A DNA stretch of 20,950 nucleotides, taken from Octopus sinensis (lineage: Eukaryota). The stretch covers positions 1 through 20,950 of the forward strand of contig NW_021823892.1 of the NCBI RefSeq assembly GCF_006345805.1, in the 5' to 3' direction. The stretch's first letter is position 1; every line of letters begins with the position of its first letter. The notes beneath the pieces are model-generated. The model searched no databases and was not told the origin of the DNA. It was given only the letters and a program-made list of their open reading frames with translations. Below are positions 2,827 to 19,311 of the stretch, one piece after another. The position numbers and the translations under genes are program-made.

Positions 2827-2906
2827 ATATACATATATATATATATATATATAATATATATATATATAATATATATATGTATATATATATATATAATGTG
2901 TATATA

Positions 2907-2945
<39 letters not shown>

Positions 2946-3001
2946 TATATATATATTTTATATTTAATATAAATAAAATGTATATATATATATGTTTAAA
3001 C

Positions 3002-3089
<88 letters not shown>
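2827..3089. repeat. Long interrupted (TA)n array
   Basis: Direct periodicity with occasional AA/TT/TG interruptions. Confidence 0.95.
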
Positions 3090-3859: not shown

Positions 3860-4102
3860 CTCCTCTCCACTCTCTCTCTCTCTCTCCTCTAAGTATATAT
3901 ATATATATATACATGTAGATATGCATATATATATACACATACATCTAATATATATAGAATGTATATATATCTGTATTTATAAGTGCGTACATATACATAT
4001 TTATATAGCATACATATACATATATATATACACGCATTTATATATGTATGTATATATGTATATATATATATTATATACATATATATTTGTATATATATTA
4101 TG

Positions 4103-4136
<34 letters not shown>

Positions 4137-4153
4137 TAGTTATGTATATATAT

Positions 4154-4192
<39 letters not shown>

Positions 4193-4207
4193 TATTATAT
4201 GTAAATT

Positions 4208-4261
<54 letters not shown>

Positions 4262-4288
4262 TAATATATGTATGTATTATGTATATGA
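3860..4288. repeat. (CT)n followed by long degenerate (TA)n/(TACA)n array
   Basis: Direct periodicity. Confidence 0.9.
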
Positions 4289-5448: not shown

Positions 5449-5466
5449 TATATATATATATATTAT

Positions 5467-5505
<39 letters not shown>

Positions 5506-5530
5506 TATATATATGTATATGTGTATGTAT

Positions 5531-5564
<34 letters not shown>

Positions 5565-5801
5565 GCATATATACGTATATAGATTATATATATATATATA
5601 TATACACTCATATACATATACATATAGTGCGTGCGTGTGTGTATATGGATGTGTGGATGTGTGTGAGTATTTAAGTCTGTGAGTGCCGGTCTGTGGGCGC
5701 GCTGGTGTCTCTATATTTTCACATATATATACATACATATATATATACACACATATATATATATATATATATAATATACATATATATATGTATATATATA
5801 T
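5449..5801. repeat. Compound (TA)n/(TG)n/(TACA)n low-complexity block
   Basis: Direct periodicity. Confidence 0.9.
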
Positions 5802-6543: not shown

Positions 6544-6567
6544 TATACATATACATACATACATACA

Positions 6568-6615
<48 letters not shown>

Positions 6616-6669
6616 ATATATATATATAGATGATACATATGTATATATAATATATATAATATATATATA

Positions 6670-6708
<39 letters not shown>

Positions 6709-6710
6709 TA
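6544..6710. repeat. (TACA)n run grading into (TA)n
   Basis: About 12 near-perfect TACA units followed by interrupted TA. Confidence 0.95.
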
Positions 6711-6890
6711 TGCGTAAATACGCACAAATTTATATCATTTAGTACATATGTATATTGTATAAATATTTAATCTACGCCTTTCAAAACATCTCTCATTGAA
6801 GACATGTATCTTCATGGCAATTGTTAAAATATCTTTTTCATGAGTAGACGGTTAAAATTTTCTTTTCATGTTCTGGCCATTTTCTGAATG

Positions 6891-7762: not shown

Positions 7763-7959
7763 GAAAATGGCTTATCGGTATTTCATCTGCCGCTACGTTC
7801 TGAGTTCAAATTCCGCCGAGGTCGACTATACTCTTCATCCTTTCTGCGTCCATAAATTAAGTACCAGTTACGCACTGAGGTCGATGTAATCGACTTAATC
7901 CGTTTGTCAGTCATTGTTTATCCCCTCTATCTTTAGCCCCTTGTGGGTATTGAAATAGG
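7763..7959 (+). mobile_element. SINE family A, headless copy (part of local duplicate of 8628-8887)
   Basis: Body GGTATTTCATCTGCCGCTACGTTCTGAGTTCAAATTCC...GAAATAGG; shares private variants and 3' flank with the copy at 8586-8819. Confidence 0.9.
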
Positions 7960-8054
7960 CATTAATTTTTGTCAGTCACATCCTACATGATATTTCCACA
8001 ATCATTTCTCCAACACTTAGAATCTGATGGCAGGCCTCTCAGCAAAATTTTCTG

Positions 8055-8190: not shown

Positions 8191-8388
8191 AATAACAATC
8201 CTCTTGACTGAAGGCTGGAAATTTTGGGAGAGGGGACTCGACTATTATATCGATCCCAGTGCGCAACTGGTACTTATTTCATCGAACCTGAAAGGATGAA
8301 AGGCGAACTCGACCGCAGCGGTATTTGAACTCTGAACTTTAAAACAGACGAACTACCCGGATTACTAACGCTTCTGCCATCTCGCCGC
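8191..8388 (-). mobile_element. SINE of family A-related subfamily (same head and core, different 3' tail)
   Basis: Minus strand: GCGGCGAGATGGCAGAAGCGTTAG...GAGTTCAAATACC...CCTTTCATCCTTTCAGGTTCGATGAAATAAGTACCAG...GATCGATATAAT, then CCCCTCTCCCAAAATTTCCAGCC...GAGGATTGTTATT. About 78% identical to the 8586 copy over ~110 bp of core. Confidence 0.85.
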
Positions 8389-8585: not shown

Positions 8586-8819
8586 AGACGGCGAGCTGGC
8601 AGAAACGTTAGCACGCCGGGCGAAATGCTTAGCGGTATTTCATCTGCCGCTACGTTCTGAGTTCAAATTCCGCCGAGGTCGACTTTACTCTTCATCCTTT
8701 CTGGGTCGATAAATTAAGTACCAGTTACGCACTGAGGTCGATGTAATCGACTTAATCCGTTTGTCTGTTATTGTTTATCCCCTCTGTGTTTAGCCCCCTG
8801 TGGGTAGTAAAGAAATAGG
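8586..8819 (+). mobile_element. Full-length tRNA-derived SINE (family A) with 21-bp TSD
   Basis: Head ACGGCGAGCTGGCAGAAACG (A-box-like), B-box-like GAGTTCAAATTCC, 3' end GTAAAGAAATAGG. Flanking direct repeat GGCATTAATGTGTGTCAGTTA (8565-8585) / GGCATTAATTTTTGTCTGTTA (8818-8838), 18/21 identical. Confidence 0.92.
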
Positions 8820-9849
8820 CATTAATTTTTGTCTGTTACAACCTACATGATATTTCCATAATCATTTCTCCAACACTTAGAATCTGAGGTAATTTCTAAA
8901 AAGTTTTCATGCACACGTACCAATAATTTTCTATCTTTCCATGTTAGACAATCAATACATTCTTTTTTAATCATATACGAATATTATTGTCAACAAAATC
9001 GTTCTTTTGTCGGCAAAACAAGACATATATTTGCACATGCATTTTTCAGTTATATTCATGAGGCATAATACAATATCAATTCCTGTTTATTGAAGTTATA
9101 AACTATTGATTAACGTTTATAAAATGCTTCACTTTTTGCTCATTTAAAATGTTATACACGATCATTTTTGCTTTATTTTTCAGTATTTACTTTTTTAATT
9201 CAAAGAACATTTAAATCTTTAATGGACTAAAATTGCAAGTAGGTGTATCCTATTTGCATGAGGATAATAGCCAAAGTAAATTAAATATTAGTACTTTAAA
9301 GTCGTATGTTCTTTTAAAAATACATTATACTTTAGACCTCTCATTGCTCAGTCAGGAATAATTTACGTCTCAGTCGAATGAAGAATGAAATGGGGAAATG
9401 CTAAATAATATAGTTTTAATTGTATTCTATTTATTCTTTCTCTTAGAAAGTCTTTTTATGTTCTGTTTGATCCGAAGTGAAAATCTGCCTAAATGACTTG
9501 GAAATTCATTAATTATCTTATGAAGAAGTTTCTTATGAACCTGTTCAACTGGGAAAACGTATCATTTCACTTCGCTTTGCTTCTTTACTGTGTTTTTTTT
9601 TCTCTTTTAATACTACTAATTCTACTCTGATTGTATTCTCACCTAGTACTCGCAATTATATTTCGCTCATTCAACACTAACATTTTTGCAACACCATATA
9701 TTTTTTCTTTCATTCTTCAATAATTTTTGTCTTTCTTTTACAAATATAATTATTCCATGAATATTTATTCGGTGATTGCCATTTCACTACGTGTGTATAT
9801 ACATGTCTGTGTGTGCCTGTGAACATATAAATGTGTTTATACACATGCT

Positions 9850-12126: not shown

Positions 12127-12480
12127 ATATATATATATATATATATATATAACTCATTTGAGTTGTATTTTTCCTGCTTGCCTCAACAAACATTCATATA
12201 CCTATCTACATACATGCGTACATACATATATGCACATATTATATACATATATACATATATATATTATATACTTAATATATATATATATATCTATATATAT
12301 ATACATGTATATATATATTAATATAATATACATATATATATATACATACATATAAATATATATAATACATATAAATATACTATATATATACATACAATAA
12401 ACATATATATATACAATATATACATATATATATATACATAGATATATACGTGTATATAATAATATACATACATAATATAC

Positions 12481-12517
<37 letters not shown>

Positions 12518-12686
12518 TATGTAAATATATATATTTATATTATATATACATTATATATAATATATTTATATATATATATATGTATAGACAGATAAATGGA
12601 TATGTATGTCTGTATGTGTGTACAAACATACAGACACACATATATACATACACATATATATACATATATGTGTATATGTATATATA
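12127..12686. repeat. Long degenerate (TA)n/(TACA)n/(TATG)n block
   Basis: Direct periodicity. Confidence 0.9.
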
Positions 12687-13347: not shown

Positions 13348-13534
13348 AGGCGGCGAGCTGGCAGAAACGTTACCGCGCCGGGCGAAATGCCTTTCGTTAT
13401 TCGTCTGCCGCTTCGTTCTGAGTTCAAATTCCGTCGAGGTCGACTTTACTTTCATCCTTTCGGGGTCGATTGAATAAGTACCAGTTACGCACTGGGGTCG
13501 ATATAATAGACTTAATCCGTTTGTCTGTCCTTGT

Positions 13535-13535
<1 letters not shown>
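13348..13535 (+). mobile_element. SINE family A, 3'-truncated at a (TA)n array
   Basis: GGCGGCGAGCTGGCAGAAACG head, GAGTTCAAATTCC B box, and core through GTTTGTCTGTCCTTGTT; the last ~45 nt of the element are missing. Confidence 0.92.
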
Positions 13536-13599
<64 letters not shown>

Positions 13600-13646
13600 A
13601 TATATAGTATGTATATATATATGATGTATATATATATATAATATAT

Positions 13647-13693
<47 letters not shown>

Positions 13694-13711
13694 TATATAT
13701 ATATACATATA
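13536..13711. repeat. Long (TA)n array
   Basis: Direct periodicity. Confidence 0.95.
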
Positions 13712-13855
13712 TGCCGTTTTGAAATAGATACAAACAACAAGTAATATTCACTTTTGGAGTCAAATTTAAATGCGATATCTGTCGTAAATACAATGGTTTC
13801 GATGCATAGCGAGTAGCAGCTTATCTGACTGGCCGTTGGTTAGTATATGTATAAC

Positions 13856-15450: not shown

Positions 15451-15558
15451 CATACATGAATACATACACACACATATATATATATATATGTATTTCTACA
15501 TTTATATATATATATACATATACATACACAATACATATACATTATATTGTGAGTATAC

Positions 15559-15601
<43 letters not shown>
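15451..15601. repeat. (TA)n/(TACA)n compound microsatellite
   Basis: Direct periodicity. Confidence 0.9.
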
Positions 15602-16039: not shown

Positions 16040-16679
16040 ATTCGCGTATTTCATTCGTGCATATTTGCATAGAGAAAGGTAGATATATATTTATACATTG
16101 AAAAAAAAAGACTCGGTGGTTATTTGTGCATGCAAGAATATAGTGTATACACCACTTACACTCAGTCTGTAAAGGGATCCTTGTAATAGAAATATAATCA
16201 CATCCACACAAGCATCAAGGAAAAAATATATTTGGGAATATGGTAAGAAATATCTTACGAACAAAGCTGCAATTTTTGTAGGTCCGGGTGTAAAGGAAGA
16301 CCTTTCTTTCATTATAGCCGGTTTACGATAAAATATTCGGATATGTCACTTCTCATCGATTTTAGAAGACTTGTCAACTTTCTATAGTTCTCAAAGTCTG
16401 TAATGAAAGTCAAAATCCACCCAGCGTGTATTGTTTCTTTGATCACCTCCTCGAAATTAAATACATGGAATTACTATATTAGGAGCATATTTCTATGAAA
16501 TCCCCTTTATCTGATGTTGGTTTACTTGCAGTAAAGTACATATTCGTTTTTGATGACAAAAACCGAACGCATATGTATGGTTCTAAGAAAAAAGTGAACA
16601 CTAAATTGACATATAGCTTTTTGGTGGACAGCTTAGGTTTAAAGTATAAAACATATGCCAACGGTATGAAGGATAAAAG

Positions 16680-17464
16680 GGCGGCGAACTGGCAGAAACG
16701 TTAGCAGGCCGGGCGATATACTTAGCAGTATTTCATCTGCCGCTACGTTCCGAGTTCAAATTCCGCTGAGGTCGACGTTGCCATTCATCCTTTCGGGGTC
16801 GATTAAATAAATACCAGTTACGCACTGGGGTCGATATAATCGACTTAATCCATTTGTCTGTCCTTGTTTGTCTTCTCTGTGTTTATCCCCTTGTGGGTAG
16901 TAAAGAAATAGGTATTTCGTCTGCCGCTACGTTCTGACTTCAAATTCCGCCGAGGTCGACTTTGCCATTGATCGTTTCGGGGTCGATTAAATAAGTACCA
17001 GATACGCACTGGGGTCGATATAATCGACTTAGTCCGTTTGTCTGTCCTTGTTTGTCACCTTTATGTTTAGCCCCTTGTGGTTAGTAAAGAAATAGGTATT
17101 TCATCTGCCGCTACGTTCTGACTTCAAATTCCGCCGAGGTAGACTTTGCCATTCATCGTTTCGGGGTCGATTAAATAAATACCAGTTACGCACTGGGGTC
17201 GATATAATCGACTTAATCCATTTGTCTGTCCTTGTTTGTCCTCTCTCTGTTTATCCCCTTGTGGGTAGTAAAGAAATAGGTATTTCGTCTGCCGCTACGT
17301 TCTGACTTCAAATTCCGCCGAGGTCGACTTCGCCATTAATCCTTTCGGGGTCGATTAAATACGTACCAGATACGCACTGGGGTCGATATGATCGACTTAA
17401 TCCGTTCGTCTGTCCTTGTTTGTCCCCTCTGTGTTTAGCCCCCTGTGGGTCGTAAAGAAATAGG
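16680..17464 (+). mobile_element. Tetrameric SINE family A: one head plus four tandem 184-bp body units, flanked by a 17-bp TSD
   Basis: GTATTTC unit starts at 16728, 16912, 17096 and 17280 (period exactly 184). TSD GGTATGAAGGATAAAAG (16663-16679) / GGTTTGAAGGATAAAAG (17463-17479), 16/17 identical. Confidence 0.95.
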
Positions 17465-17786
17465 TTTGAAGGATAAAAGAGGATGATTTAGCTGCTCTTT
17501 TTTTAAAAGAGTTATGCAATTGTGGTTTGGTTAAGTTAAATATTCCTATCTGATCGTAAAATACGGAAAATAAACCACTCGCTATTTCTTGTAGCATCTC
17601 TGTCAATGACCTTACCACCTCTCTAGTATCAGGGACCGTTTTGGCTGTGGCGGGGGTTGTATAATTGTAAGGAAGTCAGTGTATTGTTGAAATATCACAC
17701 TTCGTTAACAATAATGATTCGAAGATATCTCTGTGGGTAAACCCATAACTCGTACGGATATAGATTACCCTGGTTGTCAGATTACA

Positions 17787-19155: not shown

Positions 19156-19231
19156 GTATATATATAGATATTTAGAAATGTATATATATATATTTCCATA
19201 TATATAATTATATATATATGTTTATATGTAA

Positions 19232-19311
<80 letters not shown>

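What the first reader, a model, noticed from the sequence alone, without database searches (positions are those of the whole stretch)
16663..17479. One SINE head driving a four-unit, higher-order (A-B-A-B) concatemer inside a single TSD
Seen: a complete head (16680-16727) is followed by four body units of exactly 184 bp, and one 17-bp TSD brackets the whole array, so it descends from one insertion site. Units 1/3 and 2/4 alternate at five sites: TATTTC[A/G], AAATA.[A/G]TACC, CCAG[T/A]TACG, TCC[A/G]TT and TTTA[T/G]CCCC. That is a 368-bp higher-order repeat. Other variants cut across it: GAC for GAG in units 2-4, and ATCG for ATCC in units 2-3. Inference: a SINE caught turning into a satellite with higher-order structure and inter-unit conversion. 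It was seeded either by reverse-transcriptase re-priming during insertion or by later slippage between the 3' end/TSD (GGTAT) and the internal GGTATTTC.
Basis: partly seen in the sequence, partly recalled or inferred. Interest (0 to 1): 0.7.

Follow-up and report, generated by a model that had tools for sequence, protein, structure and literature searches.

The report
Octopus SINE with four-fold repeated body
One inserted copy of a common octopus short interspersed element (SINE) has had its 184-bp rear part copied head-to-tail four times, a small example of a kind already described in reptiles and bivalves.

Summary
Window 16663-17479 holds one 48-nt SINE head and four gap-free 184-bp units, flanked by a 16/17-matching 17-bp target-site duplication (TSD). 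The element belongs to an abundant octopus SINE. Monomers of 232 bp lie elsewhere in the window, and one lies in Octopus vulgaris chromosome OX597819.1.

The A-B-A-B alternation exists at six sites. The best ML tree is ((u1,u3),(u2,u4)), but support is only moderate (85/91 and 69/79). Units 2 and 4 are no closer to each other than units 2 and 3, and rival groupings are not rejected (p-AU about 0.09).

At most one substitution is shared by all four units, against 8-10 per unit since. The first duplication therefore happened at or just after insertion. The repeat runs from an internal GGTAT to the SINE end, where the TSD again starts GGTAT. This fits microhomology-mediated duplication, but it does not exclude a reverse-transcriptase template jump.

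The units differ by 4-10%, so this is an old array with no sign of recent growth or homogenisation, not a satellite in the making. The same architecture is published for squamate SINE-derived satellites. I could not test how common the junction is genome-wide, because no searchable collection holds the host genome.

Verdict: new member of a known kind, with modest interest.

The parts
16663..16679 (+). Left target-site duplication, GGTATGAAGGATAAAAG
   Evidence: Matches 17463-17479 at 16 of 17 positions and abuts the SINE 5' end.
16680..16727 (+). SINE head (48 nt), present once. It contains a box-A-like TGGCAGAAACG at 16690-16700.
   Evidence: Aligns with the heads of copies at 8587-8634, 13349-13398 and L001 10144-10192. 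It has 5 differences from those heads. The box A assignment is by motif only.
16728..16911 (+). Unit 1 (type A). It keeps the box-B-like GAGTTCAAATTCC at 16752-16764.
   Evidence: Its 4 private changes are at columns 24, 40, 50 and 146.
16912..17095 (+). Unit 2 (type B)
   Evidence: The junction AAAGAAATAGGTATTTC starts at 16902. Column 27 G->C falls in the box-B-like motif.
17096..17279 (+). Unit 3 (type A). It is like unit 1 except in columns 24-63, where it matches units 2 and 4.
   Evidence: It differs from unit 1 at 8 sites, 6 of them within 40 bp. The junction starts at 17086.
17280..17462 (+). Unit 4 (type B), ending at the SINE 3' end ...AAAGAAATA
   Evidence: The 3' end is defined by the L001 monomer and its TSD. 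The junction starts at 17270.
17463..17479 (+). Right target-site duplication, GGTTTGAAGGATAAAAG
   Evidence: It has one A->T mismatch to the left copy. The three internal junctions keep GGTAT.
17498..17504 (+). T7 run, the first run of 4 or more T on the + strand after the head. It is a possible RNA polymerase III (Pol III) stop for a read-through transcript of the whole array.
   Evidence: A regex scan finds no T4+ run between 16680 and 17497. The terminator role is inferred from general Pol III knowledge.
8586..8818 (+). Full-length monomer of the same SINE (head plus one body), with its own TSD of about 21 bp, GGCATTAAT.T.TGTC.GTTA
   Evidence: BLASTN gives 89% identity over 230 bp. Sequence is and the alignment.
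13348..13535 (+). Copy of the same SINE, cut at body column ~137 where a (TA)n array begins
7765..7958 (+). 5'-truncated copy. It is part of a 266-bp duplicate (7765-8027) of 8623-8887.
8244..8388 (-). Partial, diverged copy in inverted orientation

Best explanation
This is one retrotransposed copy of an abundant octopus SINE. The monomer is 232 bp: a 48-nt head plus a 184-nt body and tail. The 184-bp 3' part has been amplified in place to four head-to-tail copies.

The repeat unit runs from the internal GGTAT (SINE position 47) to the SINE 3' end. There the target DNA also begins GGTAT, so two 5-nt direct repeats lay exactly 184 bp apart.

Step 1, monomer to dimer, happened at or very soon after insertion. 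The route is unresolved. It was either microhomology-mediated slippage or unequal exchange between the two GGTATs, or a template jump by the reverse transcriptase during insertion.

Step 2 followed after the two units had diverged at about 6 sites. A two-unit (368-bp) unequal exchange or duplication most likely produced A-B-A-B. One short exchange then made unit 3 match unit 2 at columns 27 and 63.

Since then the units have drifted apart by point mutation. I infer that the array is neutral and non-functional: a small SINE-derived minisatellite or proto-satellite, not an active satellite.

Shown: the anatomy, the single insertion, the family identity, the order of branching (moderate support) and the early first duplication. 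Inferred: the molecular route of each duplication.
For: - Anatomy: four exact 184-bp units, one head, and a TSD matching at 16 of 17.
- Family: monomers with their own TSDs at 8586-8818 and in O. vulgaris OX597819.1 (L001 10144-10375, 92% identity). That locus was reached through protein CAI9723744.1, whose C-terminus is a translated SINE.
- In-situ origin: the units group together against other copies (74/79). No internal TSDs are present.
- Timing of step 1: only column 56 is shared-derived by all four units, against 8-10 changes per unit since.
- Alternation: quartet-informative sites split 6:1:0, which has P about 0.007 for this split under equal thirds (my calculation). The ML tree is ((u1,u3)85/91,(u2,u4)69/79). 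The grouping (u1,u2) is rejected at p-AU 0.0125.
- Clock: private branch lengths are 4, 4, 7 and 7, and the stems are 4 and 3. These fit one dimer duplication at about 40% of the array's age.
- Microhomology: the junction AAATA|GGTAT|TTC and the flank AAATA|GGTAT|GAAGG share 5 nt beyond the SINE end.
- The units differ at 8-18 sites, so they are distinct sequences and not one unit re-used by an assembler.
Against: - Support for the (u2,u4) pair is weak. u2/u4 and u2/u3 both differ at 13 sites. The groupings (u2,u3,u4) and (u2,u3) are not rejected (p-AU 0.086 and 0.089).
- Two of the six alternating sites (columns 8 and 125) are CpG-to-CpA changes, which recur easily. Column 8 also varies among unrelated copies.
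- A first duplication so close to insertion is what a reverse-transcriptase jump predicts. For a random later DNA event it is only about 10-20% likely a priori.
- Three independent TSDs start with RGYAT (GGTAT, GGCAT, AGTAT). The GGTAT at the flank may therefore reflect target preference, which weakens it as a discriminator.
- No orthologous locus, raw reads or genome-wide copy set could be examined.
Confidence: 0.6

Rival explanations
1. All four units were made in one event at insertion. The reverse transcriptase repeatedly jumped from SINE RNA position ~47 back to an RNA 3' end during target-primed reverse transcription. The A-B-A-B pattern arose later by gene conversion.
For: At most one substitution is shared by all units, so the array dates from insertion. 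The head sits only at the 5' end, as expected if the last round of copying ran to the RNA 5' end. The junction falls exactly at the SINE 3' end. If transcripts carry an RGYAU trailer, a 5-nt microhomology jump is plausible.
Against: A single burst predicts a star tree. The observed 6:1:0 split of informative sites and the ((1,3),(2,4)) tree would then need several separate conversion events between non-adjacent units: columns 84-159 between units 1 and 3, column 91 between units 2 and 4, column 27, and column 63. If the jump went to a bare RNA 3' end, the 5-nt match to the TSD would be chance at about 1/1024.
Confidence: 0.15
2. The array was already multimeric in a master copy. It was transcribed as one Pol III RNA and inserted here as a unit, so the A/B differences predate this insertion.
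For: There is no T4+ run on the + strand from the head to 17497 and then a T7 at 17498-17504, so read-through of about 820 nt is possible. The TSD brackets the whole array. Multimeric SINEs that amplify as such are known, for example Alu and the Dip multimers (PMC10702118, Discussion).
Against: All other copies seen are monomers or fragments: four in the window and one in O. vulgaris. The junction k-mer occurs only at the three internal junctions of this array. The GGTAT at the junctions equals this locus's own TSD start, which needs a 1-in-4 or rarer coincidence. The sample of about 41 kb is far too small to exclude a rare master.
Confidence: 0.12
3. Assembly artefact: a real dimer (or two haplotypes of it) was falsely duplicated in tandem by the assembler.
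For: False tandem duplications occur in heterozygous genomes. Exactly two periods of a 368-bp block are present. No reads could be checked.
Against: The two putative 'haplotype' copies differ by 4.3% (u1/u3) and 7.1% (u2/u4). That far exceeds the reported octopus heterozygosity of 0.08-1.1% (PMC9795677). There are no Ns or gap signatures at 17095/17096. The differences fit a clock with the rest of the array.
Confidence: 0.05
4. Three further 5'-truncated SINE copies inserted independently next to the first one.
For: SINE-rich genomes do show repeated hits at the same site (PMC10702118, Discussion). The target motif RGYAT is recreated at each junction.
Against: This would need three truncations at the identical nucleotide. 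There are no internal TSDs and the period is exactly 184 bp with no indels. The units also group together in the tree.
Confidence: 0.01

Closest known systems
SINE-derived satellites (sSats) of squamate reptiles (Vassetzky, Kosushkin & Ryskov 2023, Mob DNA 14:21; PMC10702118)
   Same: These are tandem head-to-tail repeats of a part of a SINE, with a longer terminal unit that extends to the SINE terminus. Many loci have only a few units. Unit length falls in the 150-180 bp range. Alternating dimeric patterns suggest elongation by two-unit steps.
   Different: The host is an octopus, not a squamate. The SINE family is unrelated to Squam1-3. Here there is a single locus with four units and both TSD copies still readable. 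No evidence exists for many loci, long arrays, homogenisation or subtelomeric location. That paper does not discuss TSDs or microhomology.
Tandem-like arrays of whole SINEs in bivalves (PMC11481361) and multimers of full-length Dip/B1 SINEs in a jerboa (cited in PMC10702118)
   Same: SINE sequences lie in direct tandem. In bivalves the arrays have 2-15 elements, and unequal recombination is the proposed cause. The bivalve arrays share the host phylum, Mollusca.
   Different: Those arrays repeat whole elements, heads included. Here the head is present once and only the 3' 184 bp repeats.
Alu target-site triplication (Lee et al. 2015, Gene 561:283; cited in PMC11481361 as ref. 84)
   Same: A DNA-level tandem duplication of a SINE after insertion, using short direct repeats that the insertion itself created.
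   Different: There the exchange is between the two TSDs, which gives two full elements and three TSDs. Here the exchange point is an internal GGTAT paired with the start of the 3' TSD, which gives partial units and no internal TSD.
Octopus tRNA-derived SINEs OR1, OR2 and OK (Ohshima & Okada 1994, J Mol Biol 243:25). OR1 is listed as a CORE-SINE in PMC4824008.
   Same: Host genus. It is an abundant short element with box A/B-like motifs. From memory only, the body segment TTTCGGGGTCGATTAAATAAGTACCAG resembles the CORE domain. At a very relaxed ARAGORN threshold, one copy scores as tRNA-Arg-like.
   Different: No reference sequence for OR1, OR2 or OK was available, so the family name is a lead and not a result. 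Rfam finds no tRNA match even at E<=10.
Higher-order repeats of alpha-satellite type
   Same: Units i and i+2 are more alike than neighbouring units at six sites.
   Different: Only two periods are present, and support is moderate. There is no homogenisation between periods: u1/u3 is 95.7% identical and u2/u4 is 92.9%, against 90-93% for the other pairs.

Membership tests
SINE (short interspersed element) | Short, dispersed, multi-copy element flanked by target-site duplications | tested here: met
   There are four further copies in the window and one in O. vulgaris OX597819.1. Three independent TSDs of 17-22 bp were read.
SINE (short interspersed element) | 5' head derived from a Pol III RNA gene (tRNA, 7SL or 5S) with internal box A and box B | tested here: inconclusive
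   A box-B-like GAGTTCAAATTCC and a box-A-like TGGCAGAAACG are present by motif. ARAGORN finds nothing at default settings and only weak calls at -ps70. Rfam shows no tRNA, 7SL or 5S match at E<=10.
SINE (short interspersed element) | 3' region shared with a partner LINE | not testable with these tools
   No LINE with the tail ...GTAAAGAAATA occurs in the window or in L001. No host genome or repeat library was available.
SINE-derived satellite (sSat, sensu PMC10702118) | Tandem repeats of part of a SINE with a longer terminal unit reaching the SINE terminus | tested here: met
   The structure is one head plus four 184-bp units, with the head only at the 5' end.
SINE-derived satellite (sSat, sensu PMC10702118) | Satellite-like behaviour: many loci and/or long arrays, with homogenisation | not testable with these tools
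   The number of loci is unknown, because all collection scans were empty. At this locus there are only 4 units, 4-10% diverged, so no homogenisation is seen.
Higher-order repeat (period of two units) | Units one period apart are consistently more similar than adjacent units | tested here: inconclusive
   u1/u3 has 8 differences against 13-18 for the other pairs, which meets the criterion. u2/u4 has 13 and u2/u3 also has 13, which does not. The tree is ((1,3)85/91,(2,4)69/79), and the alternatives have p-AU 0.086-0.089.
CORE-SINE / octopus OR1 | Conserved ~65-bp CORE domain in the body; tRNA-Arg-derived head | not testable with these tools
   No CORE or OR1 reference sequence was held in any tool. 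Paper-text searches for SINE strings found nothing relevant.

The most novel reading that the evidence does not exclude
The family may be predisposed by its own structure to seed 184-bp tandem arrays. Its insertions prefer targets that begin RGYAT (three of three TSDs). Many copies would then recreate, exactly 184 bp downstream, the internal GGTAT at position 47. The same junction would arise again and again across octopus genomes. Because the array has no internal Pol III stop, some multimers could be transcribed and retrotransposed whole. That would make this SINE a systematic source of nucleosome-sized proto-satellites in cephalopods.
Probability: 0.15. Interest if true: 0.55.

Novelty: new member of a known kind. 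Interest (0 to 1): 0.25.

Why it matters
This locus shows the earliest stage of tandem-repeat birth from a mobile element unusually clearly. The head, both TSD copies, the breakpoint microhomology and the order of the duplication steps can all still be read.

It would extend SINE-derived tandem repeats from squamates to cephalopods. The authors of the squamate study said it was unknown whether the phenomenon occurs outside that group (PMC10702118).

On its own it is a single, old, four-unit neutral locus. It does not change what is known about SINEs or satellites. Its value depends on whether the junction recurs genome-wide.

Tried and rejected
External searches:
- Exact-pattern scans for two conserved SINE strings and for the 26-nt junction found nothing in viral, metagenome and prokaryote-genome collections.
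- A protein word search with the minus-strand ORF that spans a junction found nothing.
- The same search with the plus-strand 69-aa ORF found only P0001.
- Exact look-ups of the two window ORFs that span the array's left and right edges were made to find independent assemblies of this locus. Neither is on record.
- Logan contigs for P0002-P0004 carry only ~73%-identical relatives from another organism, which are of no use for the junction question.

Classification attempts:
- Rfam over the whole window returned only sub-threshold miRNA hits on (TA)n and (CA)n arrays. Targeted scans of the SINE returned nothing meaningful.
- ARAGORN at default settings found nothing.
- The RNA fold of the monomer is not unusual, with z = -0.79.
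- The bacterial promoter/terminator scan is irrelevant here.
- No ORF of 80 aa or more looks coding, so the organism could not be identified from genes.
- Paper-text searches for SINE strings found nothing relevant.
- No paper found describes tandem SINE arrays in octopus.

Rejected explanations:
- Independent repeated insertions: rejected because the truncation point is identical in all units and there are no internal TSDs.
- A simple star origin without later exchange: rejected by the 6:1:0 split of informative sites.

Full report
**Observation**

Tandem Repeats Finder reports one long-period array in the window: 16728-17465, period 184, 4.0 copies, 91% matches, no indels, score 1238. Reading the sequence gives the following layout.
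- A 48-nt head at 16680-16727.
- Four units of exactly 184 bp.
- Flanking copies GGTATGAAGGATAAAAG (16663-16679) and GGTTTGAAGGATAAAAG (17463-17479), identical at 16 of 17 positions.

There is a sixth at column 147. Both cross-cutting variants are also present: column 27 reads GCCC and column 63 reads CGGC.

**What the element is**

BLASTN of head plus unit 1 against the window finds four further copies.
- A full 232-bp monomer at 8586-8818, with its own TSD of about 21 bp.
- A copy at 13348-13535, cut short by a (TA)n array.
- A 5'-truncated copy at 7765-7958.
- An inverted fragment at 8244-8388.

The normal form is therefore a 48-nt head plus one 184-nt body.

No collection scan found the sequence. 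However, phmmer of a 69-aa open frame through unit 3 against 1.84 billion representative proteins hit CAI9723744.1, a 'hypothetical protein' of Octopus vulgaris, at 90% identity. Its C-terminus is simply a translated SINE. The encoding locus is L001 (OX597819.1:6084910-6105260). It holds a 232-bp monomer that is 92% identical to the window copies and has its own TSD of about 21 bp. The element is thus an abundant octopus SINE. Octopus genomes are known for a SINE expansion (PMC10925132, PMC13282606).

A tRNA origin for the head is not demonstrated.
- ARAGORN finds nothing at default thresholds. At -ps70 it gives only weak calls, including one tRNA-Arg-like call.
- Rfam gives no tRNA match even at E<=10.
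- A box-B-like GAGTTCAAATTCC lies inside the repeated unit (columns 25-37). A box-A-like motif lies in the head.

My recollection that the body resembles the CORE domain of OR1 is a lead only.

**The 3' end and the breakpoint**

The L001 copy ends ...AAAGAAATA and is followed by its TSD, AGTATAT.... The SINE therefore ends at AAATA. The GG in 'AAATAGG' of the window copies belongs to the target. In that register the array is four units of GGTATTTC...AAAGAAATA, ending exactly at 17462.

The internal junctions read AAATA-GGTAT-TTC. The original 3' flank, preserved in the left TSD, read AAATA-GGTAT-GAAGG. Two GGTAT pentamers thus lay 184 bp apart: one at SINE position 47 and one at the start of the TSD. 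That is the signature expected of a microhomology-mediated tandem duplication.

One caveat applies. All three independent TSDs begin RGYAT (GGTAT, GGCAT, AGTAT). The flank pentamer may therefore reflect a target preference, or pairing with a transcript trailer. In that case a reverse-transcriptase template jump using the same microhomology cannot be excluded.

**History of the units**

I used L001 and the 8586 monomer as outgroups.
- Only column 56 is a candidate change shared by all four units. Each unit carries 8-10 changes of its own lineage. The first duplication therefore happened at or immediately after insertion.
- Quartet-informative sites split 6 for 13|24, 1 for 14|23 and 0 for 12|34. 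By my calculation, under equal thirds P is about 0.007 for this split, or 0.045 without the two CpG sites.
- The ML tree is ((u1,u3) 85/91, (u2,u4) 69/79), with the four units together at 74/79. The grouping (u1,u2) is rejected (p-AU 0.0125). The groupings (u2,u3,u4) and (u2,u3) are not rejected (0.086 and 0.089).
- Branch lengths are clock-like. The stems carry 4 and 3 changes and the private branches 4, 4, 7 and 7. These fit one two-unit duplication at roughly 40% of the array's age.
- Six of the eight u1/u3 differences fall within 40 bp (P 0.02-0.03). Unit 3 tests as a mosaic, with columns 24-63 like units 2 and 4 (permutation p 0.025-0.034). The stretch is CpG-rich, however. Only columns 27 and 63 are truly shared-derived with unit 2, so I regard exchange as suggested and not proven.

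JC distances between units are 0.045-0.106. On the O. vulgaris scale of JC 0.065 for about 18 My (PMC13282606), the array is many millions of years old.

**Interpretation**

The best reading is a single insertion whose 3' 184 bp was duplicated at or near insertion. The route of that first step is unresolved. A later two-unit step then produced four units, followed by neutral decay.

- A one-burst reverse-transcriptase origin would need several later conversions between non-adjacent units.
- A pre-formed multimeric master is possible. The + strand has no run of four or more T from the head to 17497, and then a T7 at 17498-17504. But every other copy seen is a monomer or a fragment, and the junction k-mer occurs only inside this array.
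- An assembly artefact is unlikely, because the units differ at 8-18 sites.
- Independent insertions are excluded by the identical truncation point and the absence of internal TSDs.

**Comparison with the literature**

Vassetzky et al. 2023 (PMC10702118) describe exactly this architecture in squamates. They report tandem repeats of part of a SINE, a longer terminal unit reaching the SINE terminus, many few-unit loci, and alternating dimeric patterns read as elongation by dimers. They state it is unknown whether the phenomenon occurs elsewhere.

Bivalves carry tandem arrays of whole SINEs (PMC11481361). Alu 'target-site triplication' is a related DNA-level route (cited there as ref. 84).

I found no paper describing such arrays in octopus.

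**Verdict**

The locus is a new member of a known kind. It is cleanly readable, but it is single, old and short.

The decisive test could not be run with the collections available. It needs a genome-wide count of the junction, with TSDs and unit variants read at each locus, plus the orthologous loci and spanning long reads.

Noticed in passing
window 7765-8027 and 8623-8887: A 266-bp dispersed duplicate at 93% identity. It consists of the 3' ~195 bp of a SINE plus ~70 bp of its 3' flank, so it was copied at the DNA level. Its SINE-side breakpoint (SINE position ~36) lies about 10 bp from the array's breakpoint at position 47.
   Followed up: partly
window 16663, 8565 (approx.) and L001 10121 (approx.): The TSDs of three independent copies of this SINE all begin RGYAT (GGTAT, GGCAT, AGTAT) and are 17-22 bp long. 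This hints at a target-site preference of the unknown partner LINE.
   Followed up: partly
window 16754, 16938, 17122, 17306: Unit column 27 is the G of the GTTC core of the box-B-like motif. Only unit 1, the one at the normal distance from the head, keeps G. Units 2-4 have C.
   Followed up: no
window 13348-13712: A SINE copy ends abruptly at body column ~137, where a ~180-bp (TA)n array begins. The microsatellite has replaced or grown out of the SINE 3' part.
   Followed up: no
window 2827-3089, 3894-4286, 5449-5626, 6544-6711, 12236-12686, 13535-13712, 15474-15601, 19157-19280: (TA)n arrays are very dense, up to ~450 bp long, with (CA)n, (TG)n and TC-rich tracts as well. They produce about 100 sub-threshold Rfam microRNA hits (mir-297, mir-3149, mir-466 and others), which are low-complexity artefacts.
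   Followed up: yes
L001 10001-10351 (O. vulgaris OX597819.1): The annotated 'hypothetical protein' CAI9723744.1 (116 aa) has a C-terminal ~68 aa that is a translated SINE monomer. The gene model is probably spurious.
   Followed up: partly
L002 (Logan SRR11869384 contig, 1495 bp): This contig holds at least three ~70-75%-identical relatives of the SINE, in both orientations, within 1.5 kb. They belong to an older or sister family in another, unidentified organism.
   Followed up: no
window 8244-8388 (- strand): A diverged partial SINE lies in inverted orientation between two direct copies. It forms 114-nt inverted repeats (75-80% complementary) with its neighbours and with the array.
   Followed up: no
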